This document shows positions 1 through 10,131 of a DNA stretch of 31,050 bases, one piece after another (positions within the stretch are counted from its first letter, which is position 1; each line of letters begins with the position of its first letter). The stretch spans positions 1 through 31,050 of the forward strand of contig CDMY01000684.1 in NCBI GenBank assembly GCA_001179505.1, in the 5' to 3' direction. A program made the position numbers and the translations under genes. Origin of the DNA: Vitrella brassicaformis CCMP3155 (Eukaryota; Protista; Chromerida). The notes under the pieces are model-generated. The model worked only from the letters and a program-made list of their open reading frames with translations. It searched no databases and had not been told where the DNA came from.

Positions 1-20
1 GGTTTGTGCTTAGCTTGCAG

Positions 21-3000
21 ACATGTCTTTCTATTTCGTGCATCTTCGGTGAGCGTTGGCAGCTCTCGTGCGTGTCTTGCTTGGCGGGCTGGCCATGCCC
101 ATGATGGACTCGTGCGTTGCGTGCCTTGCGTAAAGGCTTGTACGGCAGAGATTGATCCTTCTGACCACGGTGTGTGTTCGGCACACAGCAACTTCAACAC
201 CTTGATGACCCCAGAGGCGGCAACGCTCCGGAGCTCATCATGCTTGAGGCCCCGGTGCCCATCGACTTCGCAAGCGGCCCTTATCTGCGTCTCGATGACC
301 TCTCGCAAGTCAACGAGTCCATTGCAACGAGGCCAAGGCTGGCCGGCCACTCGCCCGTCTACGCCACACCTGAGCTTATCAACGCCATAACGGACTGTGA
401 GGAAGCTGGCGTGCGAGAGGACTACCCCATCGGCGTCAGCCGAAGGAGCATTGTGATGGTGAAGAGCAACGAAACCTCCATCGACCACAAAGAAGCCCCC
501 AGCGACCACAGGCGGCACTGGTTGGTGCAGCTGCCGAGATACCCCTCGTCTCTCTTCGAGCTCCGCTGGCTCTTGAGTGAGCAACGAGTGTATCCTTCCG
601 CCGAATCTCAGGAACACATGAGGCAGGCATCCGATCTCCGGAGGGCGGCGGCCGAAGAGAAAGACGATGCACTGTCATCCTTGTGGGCCAGGCTGAAGGG
701 GTCTCCTTCCGTGGCGAGAATCAAGGAGTGGCTCGCCATCTTGCCCGATGACGACTACGACGGTCTATCCAGCCAGCTGAGAGGCAACATCAAGCAGTTT
801 GAGGGGTGGAGAAGAAGGCTTGTCAACTCGGTTTTCGCATTTGCTCGAAAAAAGGTCGATCTCCCTCTTCTAAGCGAAGTACCAGGGATGAAGGAACATC
901 TCGATCGGGCCCTGAGAGAATGGCAGAAGAATACGATGGAATCCGTGAAGTCTGTGGCCGAGAAAGCCATGAAAACCACCGACAGTTCAGAGGAAGCGCT
1001 GGCGTCGTTAACGCACTCCCTGCAGCACTGGGAGAGACTCTTTCTGCCGCCCTCCCTGGCGGACAACAGCCTCGATGAGGTGTTGCTTTCGATCGACAGA
1101 ATGCGGCGTGCAGCGAACATCAGACTCTCCCACGTGCTGGCGGAGACATTTGTCATATGGAGGAGACAGGGCCTCTTCGGCAAAAAGACGAGACAGCCGG
1201 CTGATGATGCGAAAGAGCAGCTGATCGGGCTGGTTGTGACACTGCCGGACATTTCCTTGCCACATATGAAGGACCTGCCCGCTTTGACTACAGCTGTCTC
1301 CTCTAAGCTACAACAAGACACATCGGAACGGACCGCGGGCATCTATAAGGTCCTTGAAGGCATTCTGAGGGAGGGAGACATGCCAGCAGCAGTCAAGACC
1401 GCCATAATGGAGAGCATCAGTGGTATCCTCGCTCATTCAGAGAAAGACCAGCAGCACGCTCTTGCCATCCCTGCACACTTGGGGCTCCATCAGCTTCAGG
1501 GCTTCCTGTCCTACAAAGTCGACGAGTGGTCCGCGATGCTCGAGACAGAGATATCACGGTCGATGGACGAATGGCAAAAGATGGTCCTGCAGCTGACGGA
1601 GAAGCACCTCCTCTGGGCCAAAAATGTCGTCAGGGACACCTTTGGGTGGATCGAAGTGCATCAGGCGACGGCAAGCCCAGCAGATCAACCGATGGTGTTG
1701 GCGTATGCCTTGCAGACGGGCGACGGGGCCTTGTTCGGCGAGTGGCGGCTCACTGTTTCGGGAGATTACAGGACCACAACAGCGCGCATCGTTCCAATGT
1801 TTGGATCAAACTCTATCGTTGACACCATAATGACCGACACATTTGGTGAGGGGACCAGACGCACTACGGAAGAGCGCCCTGTAAGACACTAAACGCCGTT
1901 ATGTGTGTGCTCTGTCAGCGCAGTGGGCCTTTGCTAATACGGACACTTTGGTGCAGCTGATGAAGGCGATGGCGCAGACAATGGGCAGCCATGTGTCTGT
2001 TGCTGCTTCACTTCTCAGCAAATACGACAGCGTATACCGCGAAGTCAAGGGACACCTCAGTAAGAAAGTCGTGTGCGCAGAATATTGAAAAATATTAAGT
2101 GTCTGTGTGTGTATTCAGTGGATGTGCTGGGTGACCTCCAGGAGGGCTCAGAGACGATTAGTGAGGCCTTCGAGACGCCTGCCTTCTCCTATCGGCCGCC
2201 CCTCTGGCTTCGCGCCTCCATCCTCGCGTCATTCGCCACAGTCGCCGTCATTGTCTTTGTCTTCATTTTCTTGTGGAACCAGAGAAGATCATAGCCGGGG
2301 GCTGGTGAGCTTGCTGTTTCCCCATCAGCTACGGTCGGCATCATCGCCTTTGTGTCTCGGATATGGCGGGAGCTGACCGAACGGTTGGGTGGCGGCAAGA
2401 CTGTTCGAGACACTGAGCCGCCGAAGGAGGGCGCGTGGGCGCGTCGTGATGTGTGGTTTTCTTCGACATCACCTCGAGCAAGATCAAATCTCGATTGATC
2501 CCTGCGGTGGTCATGGCGTCGCTGTTCGACCTCCTGATGCAGTTGTTCGCCGTCTACATCCAGGCTCGCCCCAACCCCCTGGTTGTCTACTTCCACATCT
2601 GCCTGTTCGCCTCGCTGCTGATGCTCTTCCTGATCATCTACATTGGCAACAACATCTTCATCAACAAATTCTTTCTCCTTATCCCACTGCCCTTTGTGGT
2701 GCTGCTGTTGGTGGCAAGGTTGCTGGTAGCTGTGGCGGACGCGCCGGACCTCATGTTTGTCGGCGGCGTCATGCGGTGGTTCGGCGACGTGGCGATTGGG
2801 TGGTTCGAGAGCTTTGACGCCTTTGTGGGGTGGTTCGAGAGCCTTTTCGTGCCGGGGGGTCATGAGTTGAGTATCCGTCTCAGAGCCACAAGCTCCTTCA
2901 TGACTTACAGAGGTAAGGATGTAGAAAGAGCATTTCGCGGTGGTAGTGCATCATTTTGTTGCCTCTGGTTGATCATGCTTCCTGGCCGACTTTGGGCAGC

Positions 3001-5708
3001 TCTGCTTCTTGTTCCTTCTACTGTTCGTTTTGCTCTACGTCGTCTTCCTTCAAGCACCATCCTGTTGGTTCCGCAATGCCATCAACAGTGAGAGCCGCAG
3101 CTACACCGAGAAGCGGATTCAGAAGCCCGTCCTCGAGCCACAGCCAGAACCGTCCTCACCACTGGCCTTCCTGCAGAGGATGAAAAGACGAAAAGTGCCG
3201 CCGGGGGCAGACCAGCAGCAGCCTCAAGGCGAGAGCGTCGAGAAGCGAGAGGCAGAGGACGCTCCCGTGGCTGCCGAAGCTGCTACCGCATCTTCCCCTG
3301 CTGTTGACGGCAAGGGCCATTCTGCGACATCTTCCCCACACGGGGCATCGATCGGCGTTGCCCGAGTGCGTCAGCAGCCGGCTAGGGAGAGAGACGTGGA
3401 GCAGTGGAGCAGGGGAAGACGACGGGTGCTGGCCCCTAAGCTGCCCATATTTCTCTCGACCCTCATTATGATCGCCTACACTTTCTGCGGACTGGAGCTG
3501 CTCAAGAGAGCACTACGTAGCCCAAAAAACAAGCCACATATGGCATTATCCACCCGTGTCCTTGTTCTTTGTGTCAGAGATGAGTTTGAATGTGGAGCGA
3601 TTGTATGTGGGCTCGATGGCCATGGCAGATCAGGCAGAGGCGTGGGCATCCGTGCATGTCAAGCAGACCAAATGGCGTGCCCTCTTTGAAGCCTTGCCGA
3701 GCTACGATTCCGCGAGTGATGACAAAGACAACCGCTACTTTGCCGAGAAGCTGGCTTACGCGAGACACGACATGTTGAACAACAAAGTGCGCCTGATGGA
3801 CCTGAGCGCATCGCTCTCCCTCGCAAGAATCCTCGGCCCCAAGACGGAGCGCGACCTTCTCAAGCAGGCTGCCACCGACTCACAGCATCGGACCTCCACC
3901 GATGCTTCACTGGCCTCTTTTCGGTGCCACTCACCCCGGCATCCCCTATCGACAGCACCGTGCCGGAACTCACCGGTCCCTTGCCAGGAGAGTCTCGTGA
4001 GGTGTTGACGCAGGAGCAGCAGTCCTCTTTGGTGGACTTCCTGCGGAATTTCAACATGCAGCGGCTCGAGGACGTGGAGGAGACGGCAACGCGGCTTTTT
4101 AAGGGGCTTGCAGCCGTGAAGCTGCCCACTGCATTCAGTTCGGCCATCGGGGACTGTCTGATCGGAGACCAGAAGACGCGGCTTATGTCTCCCACCGCCC
4201 TTGCGGCCCCCGTCGACCAGTCGGAGCAGCTGCAAGACAGCAAGGCGCTGGAACACTTCTCGCTGTTCCTTCAAGACGGCTCTCCAGAACAGTTTTCCTC
4301 TGTCGCCCGCACTCTTTCAGCCGTCCACAAGCTGAAAGACCCAGCACTCGGCCAGAAGGACGAGAAGGTGCTCAAGAAAGCCGCGAAGCAGAAGGCAAAG
4401 CAACAGCAGGATGCGGTGTCCTACCTGTTGCGCAGCGCATTGCCGGAGGGGCTGAGAGGGCTTCTGTCCAGCTTCGGTGACGAGGCCATGAAAATCTCCT
4501 ATGCGTCGGTGTCGCTCGATTGCCGGCTGGTGATTCGCATACTGCGGCTCGGGCTGCACCTATCGAACGTGGTTGCGACGCTGTGTGTGGTTCTCCTGTG
4601 CGTGCAAGTGACCCGTTCTCATAGCGAGATGCTGGTGAGGATTGCGCGAGGAGAGACGGTGTCACCATTTCGTTCGAACAGAGTGATCAGGAAGCTCTTT
4701 GGGAGCACCGCCTACGCGTCAGCCTCTTTCTTCGTGGGCATATTATAAGAGCAGGCACGCTGGAAGGAAGCAAGCCATATTCTCCCCTTTTGTCTTGTGT
4801 CCCTTGCTGATCTGTCAGGTACACTCTCACCATCCTTTCGTACTGGACAGTGCACATCATCATAGGCCTCATCTGCGCCGGGCTGAGCGTTGTCTATGCC
4901 GACACGACCCTCAGGCGGAGAGCGATCTCCGCTGTCTCCTACTACCTCATTTTCTTGGCTGTCGTTTTGGTCCTCAAGTACCTCTTCGTGGAGACACTGC
5001 TGCTGCGGTTCGTGCTGATGGACAAGAGCAACAGCATTCGGCGACCCCGCCTGTTTGCGGTCATGTATGTGGCGATCATCGTGGTCAACTTCGCTTATGG
5101 CCTGCTGATGGGGGTGATATCGATCATCGCTGGGATCTTCTTTGGAGTTATCCTGGTCTTTCAACCGGGCCACTCATTGTTCCCGAAGTCAGCGCGGAAC
5201 TGGTGAGACATTCGTGTCTGAGACATCACAGGAGAGGGTGTCTGCTAATGGTCATTCTCTGCCCTCCATATGTGTGTGTGTGTGTGTGTGGATCTGTACT
5301 GAACGAAAATCAGGGACCCAGCATACGTTTCCTTCCTAGTACGAGGCGGACAACAGAGAGGCATCAACAGAAAGGCATCATTGTGTCTCTTCCGTATCCT
5401 TTCGTCAGGGCGCGTTGTATCTCGCCCACGAGGAGTTCAACCCAATCGCCCGCACGGCAGTGACCTTGCTGTCGGCCGAAGGCAAGAGACGTCATACGAT
5501 TCCTCCCGAGGACGAGCAAAGAGTGGCAGCTCACCGGCGAGCCAGGAATCGGTGGCATCTTGCACTGACCCTGGTAAACAACCCTTCTCTCTGTCAGAGC
5601 AAAGCATACGCTCTGTTGAGAAGAAACGATGCTTCAAATGCGAGACAGAGAGCCTCAGGGCAGACGGATGCCGGGACCCAAGGGAGCGACGGGACGGAGG
5701 CGGTGTGA
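21..5708 (+). CDS. STRA6-like (RBP_receptor family) multipass membrane protein with large N-terminal extension; 5'-partial, frame interrupted (possible pseudogene)
   Basis: Hand-spliced exons: 21-48, 189-1845, 1919-2059, 2119-(2848 or 2912), 3000-3516, 3578-3923, 3956-4717, 4819-5202, 5314-5338, 5409-5708 (TGA). The C-terminus RPRLFAVMY...VNFAYGLL...SLFPKSARNWDPAYVSFLGALYLAHEEFNPIARTAVTLL...RARNRWHLALTLVNNPSL matches human STRA6 as I recall it (NRRVLY...LNVLVG...SLLPPRAATLDPGYYTY...SHPAMTAFCSLL...RGRARWGLAYTLLHNPTL). Also SRLIPAVV ~ PRAVPAAV and TRSHSEMLVRIARG ~ LVTHRTNLRALHRG. In-frame TAG at 2292-2294 and frame changes near 2451 and 3924. Confidence 0.8.
2798..2842 (+). repeat. In-frame 30-nt-period duplication encoding GWFES twice
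   Basis: gggtggttcgagagc at 2798-2812 and 2828-2842; a degenerate third TGGTTCG at 2777. Confidence 0.85.
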
Positions 5709-5823
5709 GTGCTGCACTGCATGTAATGTGTGGAGACGTGAGATCATCCTGCAATCATCATGATCATGTCTGGTGCCCTTACTTTCTCTAACCGTGCCGG
5801 CGCTATAAGACACGCACAATGAA

Positions 5824-5912
5824 GGTCCATTGCTGGCAATGGACCCCCATTGCCGTCGGTGCCTTCCATTGCTGGCAATAAATGGCTATTGCTGGCAATC
5901 GAGATTCATTGC
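5824..5912. repeat. About 20-bp-period array of ATTGC(TGGCAAT) palindromic motifs, candidate cis-regulatory array
   Basis: ATTGC starts at 5829, 5849, 5868, 5888 and 5908. Full ATTGC-TG-GCAAT occurs at 5829, 5868 and 5888. The first copy extends to a 10-bp perfect inverted repeat GGTCCATTGC-TG-GCAATGGACC (5824-5845). Confidence 0.85.
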
Positions 5913-6072
5913 TGATTGACTCATAGAATGTCCCTGTCACCGTCATGTCACCGCACACAACAATCAACAAATGTCCATTCACTCAAGCACATGAACACAT
6001 ATGAACACATCACATCCATCCACAGTGTGTGTGATTCCACACACAGGCAGACACCACCACCACCCCGTCCGT

Positions 6073-6124
6073 CCATCCATCCATCCATCCATCCATCCAT
6101 CCATCCATCCATCCATCCATCCAT
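6073..6124 (+). repeat. (CCAT)13 microsatellite
   Basis: Direct reading; lies about 135 nt upstream of the ATG at 6259. Confidence 0.95.
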
Positions 6125-6258
6125 CAGTGTTTTTGGTAATCACCCAATGTGTTCGACGACCGATCGGCCATCCGATCGGCACATCATGTAGGGTTTGGGG
6201 TCAAGGGTTTGCTCCAGGACCCAGGGCACCAATGCGGCTGCGGTGCACGAACCGCGCC

Positions 6259-6786
6259 ATGGCCAGCAAGGCCTGCTCATCCCTCTTGACGCGCACAACC
6301 ACTGTCGCCTCGCCCCGTCCCCTCTTCGCGCCACTCGCCGCATCCGTGCGTCGCTTCGGCGCGGGCGGTCCCCCGATGAAGGTGGTCGACAAGCCGCTGG
6401 GCTACTACCCGAAGGAGGAGTATCACTCCCCCAACCCCGGTCCGCTCAGCCCGGTGGAGATGGAGTACAACCTGATGGGCAACCGTCTGAACGGCCTCAA
6501 CTCGCCCAAGATGGTGTACCGCACTGGCCCGAACATGGACAACGACAAGTGGGGCGTGCGAGAGGACAACTGGCTCAGCGTGGGCAGCCACCCATACGGC
6601 GGGTGGATCATTTTCTGGGGCGGGTCGGCCTTCACGTTGATTTGTGTGGTGCTGTACAACCTCAACGTGCTCCACTGGTGGAAGTCGTCGACCCCCTGGT
6701 CGGGCGGAGGAGGTCGACCGTGGGGCAGAGGATACCCGTGGGGCACATTCCCGGCCTGGCGACCGGGCGTCATGAAGGGATACTGA
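6259..6786 (+). CDS. Intronless 175-aa putative mitochondrial single-pass inner-membrane protein
   Basis: ATG in gccATGg context. N-terminus MASKACSSLLTRTTTVASPRPLFAPLAASVRRF is rich in R/S/T/A and lacks acidic residues, typical of a mitochondrial presequence. One hydrophobic segment (GGWIIFWGGSAFTLICVVLYNLNVL). Strong GC3 codon bias; flanked by microsatellites. An upstream in-frame ATG at 6232 is an alternative start. Confidence 0.8.
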   Translation: MASKACSSLLTRTTTVASPRPLFAPLAASVRRFGAGGPPMKVVDKPLGYYPKEEYHSPNPGPLSPVEMEYNLMGNRLNGLNSPKMVYRTGPNMDNDKWGVREDNWLSVGSHPYGGWIIFWGGSAFTLICVVLYNLNVLHWWKSSTPWSGGGGRPWGRGYPWGTFPAWRPGVMKGY

Positions 6787-8316
6787 TCTGTCTGTCTGTC
6801 TGTCTGTGCGGGCAGGGAGGGAGGGAGGGAGGGGCGGTGTATCTATCGGTTTGCGCTTGGTCTGTGATGTGGTGTGGTGTGGTGCTGCTACGCTACTGGC
6901 TGTGTGTGAGGTAGTCTGGTGGCGTATCTTCGCGTGAGTGGTCAGGTCACCCGTGAGTTCATTTCTTCGGTGGGCCACTCACTGCGTTGGCTTCGCACGG
7001 CGCTCTCCTCCAAGTGCCGTGTGGAACCGTCGCAGTCGCCAGCCGGAAGAGATGGAACACAGGGATCACATGCACACACACACACACGGCTCTGAGCGAG
7101 TAGCGAATCGACTTGGGTCGTCTTGGTTGTTGTATGTGCTGCAACATACTTGATGGTCTGCCTGCGATTGCTCTCGCATTCGTGTGCTTCTCGCTTTACT
7201 TGGCGTAGCATCGGATGACGTCGTTGGCTGTGGGGATCTGAGCCCGACAGCTGATGACGTCGATCGCTGCAGCGCCACGTGAGGCCGGAACACTCAGATT
7301 GAATGGATGACTTGGGCAAGTTTTTTCATCAGCGGAGGAGTGGGTGGTGGGTGGGTGGGGTGGGGTGGGGTGGGTGGTGTACCATGATCGGCATGATCGG
7401 CTGTGTCTGTCTGTGTGGCTGGGCTGCATCAGTGCGGTGCAGCAAGCGATGAATCAGAGACACACCACACCTGTGTGTGCGCTAGTAGTGAGTGTGTGTG
7501 GACTCACTCTATGCGAGAAGCGTAAGGGAGCATTTGAATTAGCATATATATGCCACCATGGATGTATCGATATATGTACGGGAGGTCTCTCACCCTTTCT
7601 CAACCAGCCATATACACCCACACAGACACAGACGCATACACACACCGCACACAGCACACAGCACAGACGTCCCTCCACCCACCCCCTTAGTTAGATCAAT
7701 CAAAACACGCACACGCCACTCCATTCCATGATTGGCATGCTCGTAATCACAGCACGCCAACATTGTGCACATCGCCTCTCAAAGAAAACCGCAGGGAGGC
7801 GGGCAGCGAGCGACAGACAGACAGACATGGTGATATATAAAGGAACGGAACGTTTCAACACATCCATCCATTCGCCAGCTTCCATGTAGGTCTGGATGGA
7901 TGGATGAATGGATGGATGAGCGAGTGGTGAGTGTGTGTGTGTGTGTGTGGGTGGCCCGCCTCAAAAATACGACTGTATGCAATCGACTGACCACACAATG
8001 TTGTCTCACCATCCCTGTCAACCAGAAGAGGTGACGCCACACCACACCGCTCAAGCACACCACAGGCAGACAGACACAAACTCACTCAGAAACCTTCCAA
8101 CCTGCCTCCATCCACGCCACGCACGTCAAATGAACACAAGCACGCACACGCCACCTTCGTTGAATCAATCAATCACTGAGGGAAATGGACATATACAATA
8201 CAGAGAGAGAGAGGATGTAGGCAGACAGAAGGATGGGAGAGCATTGCTGGCAAGACGGCCTTGGGGGGGAGAGGGAGGAGGGAGGGGGGAGGGGGGGAGG
8301 TCAGCTGAGTGATCGA

Positions 8317-8755
8317 TCACCCGCCGGCCCCGTGCTGCTCCTCGTCTTCGTCCACCACTCGAGTGTAGTGCACGCGCCAACGCACACCATCACCTGCACA
8401 CACACACAGAGGGAGGGAGATGGAGAGGGAGAGAGTGAGTGTGCGGGCGGGCTCCTGTTGTCTGTCTCTCTGTGTGCGAGTGTGTGTGTGTTCGCGTGCC
8501 GTGTCAGTCACCGACCCACCTCACCTGATGGTCGCGATATTGTTGTGTGGAAGGGGAGCATCCACCCCAGGATGTGGGAACCAAACACCTACACAACACA
8601 CGCACCTCGTCGCATCTCATCTCGTATGTGGTCCATTCCATCAGTGTGTGTGTTGCAGGTAGGTACCTGTTCCCAGTTCCGCCTTGAGCCGATGTCGTAC
8701 TTGGACCTCTGCGACGCGTCACGCTCCAAGTTCTCAATCGTCGTGTAGTTCTGAC

Positions 8756-8789
<34 letters not shown>

Positions 8790-8929
8790 TAAACACACAC
8801 GGGAGCATGGCTGACTTGACTGACCTCGAGGACCAGCCTGACGTGGAATTTGATGAAGTTGGTCAGCGCGAACAACAAGACAATCGACAGCATCGCAGAC
8901 TGACAAACATCCACACAGACGGAGGGGGA

Positions 8930-8971
<42 letters not shown>

Positions 8972-9687
8972 GGGAGAGAGAGAGAGAGGGAGGGAGAGAG
9001 AGCAGGCGTGTGTCGGTCTGGTCTGGTCTGGTCTGTGTGTCCTGCCTGCCTGTGTGTGGCAGGCATCATCCCACTACTCACTACTCACTCACTCACCACG
9101 AGGACACAGACGTCCCATATTTCGATGAACCTGATGGGCTGCTGCATCTTGATCAGGAACAGCACCCGCAGCACGATCCACGCTATCCTGCACACACACC
9201 CAGACAGACAGACAGACGCACCCATGTCATCCCATGCATGTGTGTGGGATGGGATGATCTCATAGATGCCCACCCACCCTACTCACCCTGTGCTGGTGGT
9301 GACGAGTAGGCAGATGTAGACGTAGAAGAGGAGCTGCATGAAGAACTTGCGGTTGTAGAAACCCACGCAGTTGTTGATCCATGGGCAGTGGTGGTCCATG
9401 TTCAACACACTGAATGAATGAGATGAATGAACTCACCGACAGATAGACCATCAAGCAAAGCAGCCACACTCCCTCCCTCCCTGTCTGTCTGTCTGTCTGT
9501 CTGTGTGTGTGTGTGGTGCCTGCGACCGCCGTACGTACCATCTGTTGCAGATGGAGCAGTGGTGGGTGCGGTCAGGTTTCCACACGTTGCACATCTTGCA
9601 GTACCGCCGCCTCTTGGTCTCGTCACCCATGTAGAACCCCCAGTTGGGCGGCACCACACCCGGATCTGTCATGACAGACTGAATGAA

Positions 9688-9720
<33 letters not shown>

Positions 9721-10131
9721 CGCACCCATCCATCCATCAGCCCGTCGGCCCAGCAATGTGTGTGTGTGTGTGTGTGTGTGAGAGGTGTTGTGCCTGCCTG
9801 GCAGAATGCGAGGAGCATGAGTAGGAAGAAGCCGTGGAAGACCAAGAGGAGGGTGATGCCCCAGGCCGTCCTGAACCATTGAGGCATGATGCAAAACATA
9901 AACACGAAATACTCAAACACTGCACCAATGCAATGCAATCAATGCAAGGCACACACGCACACAGCAAACCCATACACACAGAGAGAGAGAGAGGGAGAGA
10001 TCATCATCATCGCCTCTGTCTGTTGCCTGTCTGTCTGTCATTCTGGTACTACCGATGAGTGCGACGACCATCATAATGAAATGGATCCCGCTCTTGCGGG
10101 AGGTCGTGTTGCATGGCCGTAACCGCTGCAT
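8317..10131 (-). CDS. DHHC-type protein S-acyltransferase (palmitoyltransferase), 284 aa, 9 exons
   Basis: complement(join(8317-8393, 8525-8588, 8667-8750, 8825-8899, 9097-9187, 9287-9409, 9539-9678, 9798-9919, 10053-10131)); all phases agree (855 nt). Motifs: [66 protein letters not shown], four TM segments. Confidence 0.96.
8921..9003 (+). repeat. Near-pure polypurine (GA/GGA) tract inside a DHHC intron
   Basis: About 80 nt of G/A only on the + strand, i.e. polypyrimidine in the pre-mRNA. Confidence 0.9.

What the first reader, a model, noticed from the sequence alone, without database searches (positions are those of the whole stretch)
2119..5708. STRA6/RBP-receptor-family transporter in an apparent alveolate protist
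Seen: ordered matches to STRA6 across the whole domain (TM1-TM2 linker, THRxNLRxLHRG-like helix, SNRVIRKLFGSTAY vs human SRQAIFCWMSFSAY ungapped, SLFP...WDPAY, and RARNRWHLALTLVNNPSL at 5538-5591). Established: vertebrate STRA6 is a dimeric retinol-uptake receptor for serum RBP4, and its C-terminal RxRWxLAxTLxxNPxL helix binds calmodulin. Inference: a unicellular organism without serum RBP keeps the fold and the CaM-binding helix. That points to an older Ca2+/calmodulin-regulated lipid, sterol or carotenoid channel function that is poorly characterised outside animals.
Basis: partly seen in the sequence, partly recalled or inferred. Interest (0 to 1): 0.85.

Follow-up and report, generated by a model that had tools for sequence, protein, structure and literature searches.

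The report
STRA6-like membrane protein gene in Vitrella
The alga Vitrella brassicaformis has a many-pass membrane protein gene whose tail closely matches the calmodulin-binding helix of the animal vitamin A receptor STRA6; public databases already tag it with that family, but only its last ~230 residues show detectable kinship, and it has not been studied.

Summary
The window is the whole contig CDMY01000684.1 of Vitrella brassicaformis CCMP3155.

**What holds up**
- The core observation is real. The last exon (5409-5708) hits Pfam RBP_receptor above its curated cut-off.
- Its helix at 5538-5591 is 15/26 identical to the zebrafish STRA6 calmodulin-binding peptide BP2.
- The preceding transmembrane exon (4819-5202) is placed with RBP_receptor clusters by protein-language-model features.
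- A close relative in a metagenome shows purifying selection (dN/dS 0.22).

**What does not hold up**
- "Ordered matches across the whole domain" is not confirmed. No other exon gives any RBP_receptor or STRA6 signal by Pfam, PDB search or language-model features.
- The fold could not be tested, because no tool accepted a spliced protein.

**Gene structure**
- Codon statistics suggest the last two are one gene, split by the annotators at an unresolved frame change.
- No RNA evidence was found.

**Verdict**
This is a new member of a known family with moderate interest. Papers call STRA6 animal- or vertebrate-specific, yet databases already hold protist members.

The parts
240..2294 (+). Annotated gene 1, 640 aa (P0006). 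Exons 240-1845, 1919-2059 and 2119-2294. It ends in one hydrophobic helix followed by NQRRS and a stop, which looks like a tail anchor. It is probably a separate gene, not the first helix of the STRA6-like protein.
   Evidence: the exon model reproduces P0006 exactly. No Pfam hit. No homologue of 316-1006 aa. AlphaFold pLDDT 35.7. Joining it to 2479 would need a GTGGAA donor and a GAG acceptor, whereas all 7 annotated introns end in CAG.
2513..3923 (+). Probable N-terminal half of the STRA6-like gene (annotated gene 2, 451 aa, 2513-4008). Exons 2513-2920, 3000-3516 and 3578-~3923. It has about five hydrophobic helices followed by a long soluble stretch.
   Evidence: the model reproduces 451 aa. 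Hydropathy. No Pfam, PDB or Atlas link to RBP_receptor. The annotated tail 3924-4005 scores as non-coding, -0.52 per codon.
3871..3992 (+). Unresolved frame change between the two annotated halves. The candidates are a 32-nt GT-AG intron at 3924-3955, or GC-AG introns such as 3885-3955 or 3904/3913-3992.
   Evidence: Enumeration. The DNA of three runs agrees with the window with no indels. The stretch 4009-4055, between the gene 2 stop and the gene 3 ATG, scores 0.60 per codon in the gene 3 frame. In-frame windows average 0.32 and off-frame windows -0.39; none of 118 off-frame windows reaches 0.44.
4056..4717 (+). First exon of annotated gene 3 (456 aa, PF14752). Soluble helices followed by one transmembrane helix; contains SNRVIRKLFGSTAY. 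The donor is either the GT at 4718 (used by the annotation) or position 4745. At 4745 the relative L001 has GTAAGA and this genome has ATAAGA.
   Evidence: A phmmer search of 3957-4745 against 1.84 billion representatives gave only 3 spurious hits. Atlas gave no family.
4819..5202 (+). Transmembrane exon with three long hydrophobic helices. This is the only membrane part with a family signal.
   Evidence: Atlas features: the top hits are RBP_receptor clusters (score 0.90, 203 of 256 features, 19 of 100 hits; the next family scores 0.69). It is 92% identical to P0005 of relative L001. No Pfam or PDB hit.
5314..5338 (+). 25-nt mini exon encoding (W)DPAYVSFL, flanked by GT-AG introns 5203-5313 and 5339-5408.
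   Evidence: It is needed to reproduce the annotated 456 aa. Indels against L001 in the flanking introns are 4, 4 and 11 nt, i.e. not multiples of 3.
5409..5708 (+). Last exon: cytosolic tail with the RBP_receptor match, plus the stop codon.
   Evidence: PF14752 at E 5.4e-6, 25.8 bits against a cut-off of 25. STRA6 5sy1_A residues 596-634.
5538..5591 (+). BP2-type putative calmodulin-binding helix, RARNRWHLALTLVNNPSL.
   Evidence: The core is identical in relative L001 despite synonymous changes, and there it is interrupted by an extra 61-nt GT-AG intron.

Best explanation
The stretch 2513-5708 encodes a Vitrella brassicaformis member of the RBP_receptor (STRA6-like) family.

- It is most likely one gene that the public annotation cut in two.
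- The protein is a polytopic membrane protein: about five N-terminal helices, a roughly 300-residue soluble loop, a second cluster of four or five hydrophobic helices, and a cytosolic tail.
- The tail carries a helix nearly identical to STRA6 BP2, the main calmodulin-binding helix.

Shown here: family-level kinship of the last ~230 residues, purifying selection, and the exon structure of the 3' half.

Inferred only: that the tail binds Ca2+/calmodulin, and that the membrane part works as in STRA6, as an energy-independent, calmodulin-tuned conduit passing a small hydrophobic ligand (a retinoid, a carotenoid-derived molecule or another lipid) between a carrier and the membrane. No serum RBP would be involved.
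For: - Organism and annotation.
- PF14752 above its cut-off on the last exon, and precomputed on the annotated 456-aa product.
- Matches to zebrafish STRA6 and its CaM-bound peptide. BP2 identity is 15/26.
- Exon 4820-5203 falls with RBP_receptor clusters, including diatom and mollusc ones. It sits in the right order, directly upstream of the BP2 match.
- Hydropathy gives a two-cluster helix layout with a long middle loop.
- dN/dS is 0.215 over 280 codons against relative L001. The one indel inside an exon is in frame, while indels in the introns are not.
- An intron precisely present or absent inside the BP2 codons keeps the reading frame.
- Coding signal upstream of ATG 4056, with no in-frame ATG, argues that genes 2 and 3 are one.
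Against: - All hard sequence evidence sits in about 40 residues of the tail.
- Every other exon is blank in Pfam, and the two exon regions searched against PDB gave no STRA6 hit. Two of three Atlas queries found nothing.
- PMC9333335 warns that some proteins hit only the late part of the RBP_receptor model (positions above 400).
- A fragment model (pLDDT 67) found no STRA6 fold.
- No canonical intron of normal length joins the two halves. The only GT-AG option is 32 nt, while the annotated introns are 59-111 nt.
- The donor at 4745 is ATAAGA here.
- No indexed RNA run holds the gene.
Confidence: 0.72

Rival explanations
1. Only the calmodulin-binding tail is shared with STRA6. The membrane domain would be an unrelated polytopic protein that acquired, or converged on, a BP2-like helix.
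For: The Pfam and PDB matches cover only the tail. No other exon is recognised. PMC9333335 reports partial hits to late positions of the RBP_receptor model.
Against: The transmembrane exon directly upstream is placed with RBP_receptor clusters at 0.90 with 203 of 256 shared features, well clear of the next family at 0.69. The overall helix layout fits.
Confidence: 0.13
2. The locus is a decaying or genuinely split gene. The frame break near 3900 and the G-to-A change at the 4745 donor would then be lesions, and the halves would be separate or non-functional products.
For: The annotation ends gene 2 at 4008 and starts gene 3 at 4056. There is no normal-length canonical intron. The window has ATAAGA where L001 has GTAAGA. 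No RNA holder was found.
Against: dN/dS is 0.215 for the 3' half. There is strong coding signal in the 48-nt 'intergenic' gap. An in-phase GT at 4718 rescues the reading frame. All exons have open frames.
Confidence: 0.12
3. One reading: the 640-aa upstream protein is fused to the STRA6-like domain as one protein of about 1600 aa, through an intron at 2273-2478 that bypasses the stop at 2292.
For: Only 218 nt separate the stop at 2294 from ATG 2513. The 11 codons upstream of ATG 2513 score as coding (0.43 per codon), and they extend the first helix to full length behind KIKSR.
Against: The annotation keeps the genes apart. The required splice sites, GTGGAA and GAG, are unlike the 7 annotated introns, which all end in CAG. 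Gene 1 ends like a classic tail anchor. A 640-aa N-terminal domain with no signal peptide placed outside the membrane is unlikely (inference).
Confidence: 0.3

Closest known systems
Zebrafish STRA6 (PDB 5SY1) and its BP2/CaMBP2 peptide bound to calmodulin (PDB 5K8Q)
   Same: The C-terminal helix matches with W, L, L, TLVNNPSL conserved, 15/26 identical. It lies about 65 residues after the last hydrophobic segment. The protein is multi-pass, with two helix clusters separated by a long loop.
   Different: There is no detectable sequence similarity in the membrane helices, or in the loop between the sixth and seventh helices where RBP binds. The soluble insertions are much longer (about 300 residues). 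No serum RBP4 partner is expected in an alga. Dimer formation and fold are untested.
Pfam PF14752 RBP_receptor members outside animals (for example the ESM Atlas cluster 'Retinol binding protein receptor domain-containing protein', mostly diatoms)
   Same: Same family tag, protist origin, and similar language-model features for the transmembrane exon.
   Different: No alignment could be made here, because their sequences could not be fetched. Whether they keep the BP2 helix is unknown.
RBPR2 / STRA6L, the vertebrate paralogue
   Same: Same Pfam family; an RBP4 receptor described in the papers listed.
   Different: It is a vertebrate protein tied to RBP4. Similarity to the Vitrella protein was not tested.

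Membership tests
Pfam PF14752 RBP_receptor (STRA6/RBPR2) | Whole-protein score at or above the Pfam gathering score | tested here: met
   The last exon alone scores 25.8 bits against a cut-off of 25, E 5.4e-6. A hit is also precomputed on the annotated 456-aa product. The margin is thin, and the match covers only profile positions 559-602 of 605.
Pfam PF14752 RBP_receptor (STRA6/RBPR2) | Match along the membrane part of the profile | tested here: not met
   Tested exon by exon, there is no RBP_receptor hit at E<=10 for 2513-2920, 3000-3515, 3580-3921, 4056-4715 or 4820-5200. The spliced protein could not be submitted, so weak scores could not be summed.
STRA6 | BP2 calmodulin-binding helix in the C-terminal tail | tested here: met
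   At sequence level only: hits to 5k8q_B (E 0.0026) and 5sy1_A residues 596-634, and 15/26 identity to the zebrafish BP2 peptide of PMC12714816. Binding itself was not tested.
STRA6 | Nine transmembrane helices plus an intramembrane helix; fold as in 5SY1 | tested here: inconclusive
   Hydropathy gives 5 (or 6) plus 4-5 hydrophobic segments. The AlphaFold model of exon 4820-5203 alone (pLDDT 67) found nothing in PDB or AFDB. The nine-helix count is taken from PMC8595884.
STRA6 | RBP4-binding extracellular loop between helices VI and VII | not tested
   No reference sequence could be obtained. No RBP4 is expected in a chromerid (inference).
RBP_receptor family, by language-model features | Transmembrane region groups with family clusters | tested here: met
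   Met for exon 4820-5203 (0.90, 203 of 256 features, recognition 2737). Not met for 2483-2911 or 4380-4745.

The most novel reading that the evidence does not exclude
The STRA6 family, together with its high-affinity calmodulin-binding BP2 helix, predates animals and serum RBP. A photosynthetic relative of apicomplexans keeps a full STRA6-fold, Ca2+/calmodulin-tuned conduit for a hydrophobic ligand. The ligand might be carotenoid-derived retinal for microbial rhodopsins, or cargo of algal lipocalins. The vertebrate vitamin A receptor would then be a late specialisation of an ancient eukaryotic lipid gate.
Probability: 0.45. Interest if true: 0.65.

Novelty: new member of a known kind. Interest (0 to 1): 0.45.

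Why it matters
Papers describe STRA6 as animal-specific (PMC5977736) or as appearing with vertebrates (PMC12714816), and link its mechanism to serum RBP. A chromerid alga has a tail helix closer to zebrafish BP2 than sheep BP2 is. This suggests calmodulin control is the oldest and most constrained feature of the family, and that the ancestral ligand was not RBP-bound retinol. If so, there would be a tractable non-animal system (Vitrella, and possibly diatoms) for asking what the fold does without RBP. The database tag already exists, so the value lies in pointing out the conserved BP2 helix and in correcting the gene model, not in discovering the family member.

Tried and rejected
1. RNA evidence. 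Read laying on 1-5950 with X1-X3 and X6: X1-X3 proved to be DNA runs (flat depth, no joints), and the RNA run X6 covers only the repeat at 1-200. Two run searches found no RNA holder.

2. Exhaustive phmmer with exon 3957-4745 against 1.84 billion representatives gave three hits. All were low-complexity or Ig-repeat proteins. In hindsight the transmembrane exon would have been the better query.

3. The search for homologous proteins. The last exon and the transmembrane exon each returned only the ORF calls of the one close relative contig, because of the length filter. The upstream ORF returned only the window's own 640-aa protein.

4. Two metagenome scans with exons 4056-4717 and 4820-5203 found no relatives.

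5. Structure. The fragment model of 4820-5203 gave only non-specific helical hits in PDB and AFDB clusters. P0006 folded at pLDDT 35.7.

6. Protein comparison does not accept a PDB chain id, and the STRA6 structure paper PMC5114850 is not held.

7. My first guess of a 43-nt intron at 1881-1923 was wrong. The annotated intron is 1846-1918, 73 nt.

8. No tool takes a spliced protein by reference, and long sequences may not be typed.
Full report
**Identity of the DNA**

The 575-aa open frame at 165-1889 retrieved a 640-aa protein that is 100% identical. It is named "unnamed protein product [Vitrella brassicaformis CCMP3155]" and sits on a contig of 31,050 bases. Looking that protein up returned NCBI record GCA_001179505.1:CDMY01000684.1. 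Its first 12,294 bases equal the window. Earlier notes of this scan said the same.

**Public annotation**

- 240-2294, 640 aa, no Pfam family
- 2513-4008, 451 aa, no Pfam family
- 4056-5708, 456 aa, with PF14752 RBP_receptor already on record

I rebuilt exon models that reproduce these products exactly or by length:
- Gene 1: 240-1845, 1919-2059, 2119-2294
- Gene 2: 2513-2920, 3000-3516, 3578-4008
- Gene 3: 4056-4717, 4819-5202, 5314-5338, 5409-5708

The seven introns are 59-111 nt long, and all end in CAG.

**The observation**

The helix RARNRWHLALTLVNNPSL is encoded at 5538-5591.
- The last exon alone scores 25.8 bits on PF14752 against a cut-off of 25 (E 5.4e-6), on profile positions 559-602 of 605.
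- Against all PDB sequences it finds zebrafish STRA6 (5sy1_A, residues 596-634, E 0.0065) and the STRA6 peptide crystallised with calmodulin (5k8q_B, E 0.0026).
- PMC12714816 prints the BP2 peptides. The Vitrella helix is 15/26 identical to zebrafish BP2, ungapped. Zebrafish and sheep BP2 share 12/27.

This part of the finding is solid and far beyond chance.

**The rest of the domain**

Taken exon by exon, nothing upstream of the last exon reaches RBP_receptor even at E<=10. Two exon regions were also searched against PDB: 2450-3088, which holds exon 2513-2920, and the transmembrane exon 4820-5203. Neither finds STRA6.

The ESM Atlas feature search gave three results:
- The transmembrane exon 4820-5203 falls clearly with RBP_receptor clusters: score 0.90, 203 of 256 features, 19 of the top 100 hits, and the next family at 0.69. 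The clusters include ones dominated by diatoms and molluscs.
- The exon at 2483-2911 was not recognised.

An exhaustive phmmer of 3957-4745 against 1.84 billion representatives found only spurious repeat proteins. Kinship is therefore supported for roughly the last 230 residues: three hydrophobic helices, the mini exon and the tail. It is not shown for the N-terminal half.

Hydropathy of the assembled product shows two helix clusters separated by a loop of about 300 residues. This is compatible with the nine-helix STRA6 plan described in PMC8595884, but it does not prove it.

PMC9333335 notes that some proteins hit only late positions of the RBP_receptor model, so a tail-only match must be read with care.

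**One gene or several**

*Genes 2 and 3.* They are 48 nt apart.
- With a codon model trained on the other exons, the gap 4009-4055 scores 0.60 per codon in the gene 3 frame. In-frame windows average 0.32 and off-frame windows -0.39. None of 118 off-frame windows reaches 0.44.
- The annotated tail of gene 2 (3924-4005) scores -0.52.
- There is no in-frame ATG upstream of 4056.

I conclude, at about 75%, that the two are one gene with a junction somewhere in 3871-3992. The only GT-AG solution is a 32-nt intron at 3924-3955. Several GC-AG solutions of 71-125 nt also exist. Contigs of three DNA runs agree with the window without indels, so this is not an assembly frameshift.

*Gene 1.* It ends with a single helix plus NQRRS and a stop, which looks like a tail anchor. 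Fusing it to 2479 would need a GTGGAA donor and a GAG acceptor.

**A close relative**

The last exon retrieved a 113-aa ORF from an ENA metagenome contig (L001, 2268 bp). The contig is 92-96% identical to window 4570-6833.
- Over 280 codons, dN/dS is 0.215.
- The one indel inside an exon is 6 nt. Indels in my introns are 4, 4 and 11 nt.
- L001 carries an extra canonical 61-nt intron exactly inside the BP2 codons, which the window lacks, and the reading frame is kept.
- L001 has a GTAAGA donor at window position 4745 where the window has ATAAGA. The annotation uses the in-phase GT at 4718, giving a product 9 aa shorter.

**Expression**

No indexed RNA run holds the gene. The one RNA run laid on the window covers only the repeat at 1-200.

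**Fold**

- A model of exon 4820-5203 alone (pLDDT 67, three helices) gave only non-specific hits in PDB and AFDB.
- Gene 1 folded at pLDDT 35.7.

The fold claim is untested.

**Mechanism**

This is inference. In STRA6, BP2 binds Ca2+/calmodulin with sub-nanomolar affinity, and calmodulin is thought to tune the direction of retinol transport (PMC12714816, PMC8595884). Calmodulin is nearly invariant across eukaryotes. That would explain why BP2 is the best conserved part of the protein. The most likely reading is a calmodulin-regulated, energy-independent conduit for a small hydrophobic ligand. The ligand and its carrier are unknown.

**Novelty**

Papers call STRA6 animal-specific (PMC5977736) or vertebrate (PMC12714816). 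My searches found no paper on protist members. The Pfam tag on this very protein, and on diatom clusters, is nevertheless already public. This is a new, unstudied member of a known family.

Noticed in passing
window 1-200: High-copy repeat. Contig word depth is 700-3300 against a genome depth of 12-51 in the same DNA runs, with many contigs branching at about 153 and 200. It is also present in the RNA run X6.
   Followed up: no
L001:1012-1072, against window 5567/5568: A canonical 61-nt GTAAGT...GCAG intron is present in a relative that is 92-96% identical and absent from Vitrella CCMP3155. It sits exactly inside the BP2 helix codons. This is a recent, precise intron gain or loss.
   Followed up: partly
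window 4745: The splice donor reads GTAAGA in relative L001 and ATAAGA in the window. An in-phase GT at 4718 can substitute, which removes 9 residues from a hydrophobic helix.
   Followed up: partly
window 240-2294: An orphan 640-aa, mostly helical protein ending in a tail-anchor-like helix. It has no Pfam family, no homologue of 316-1006 aa among 5.8 billion clusters, and an AlphaFold pLDDT of 35.7.
   Followed up: partly
window 3924-4008: The last 28 residues of annotated gene 2 (Cys/Pro-rich) score as non-coding. The public gene models for 2513-4008 and 4056-5708 look like one gene split in two.
   Followed up: yes
window 6068-6125: A (TCCA)14.5 microsatellite lies upstream of annotated gene 6232-6786. 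That 184-aa gene is 89% conserved at the DNA level in L001 and has no Pfam family.
   Followed up: no
window 8317-10131 (-): Annotated 284-aa gene with PF01529 DHHC, a palmitoyltransferase.
   Followed up: no
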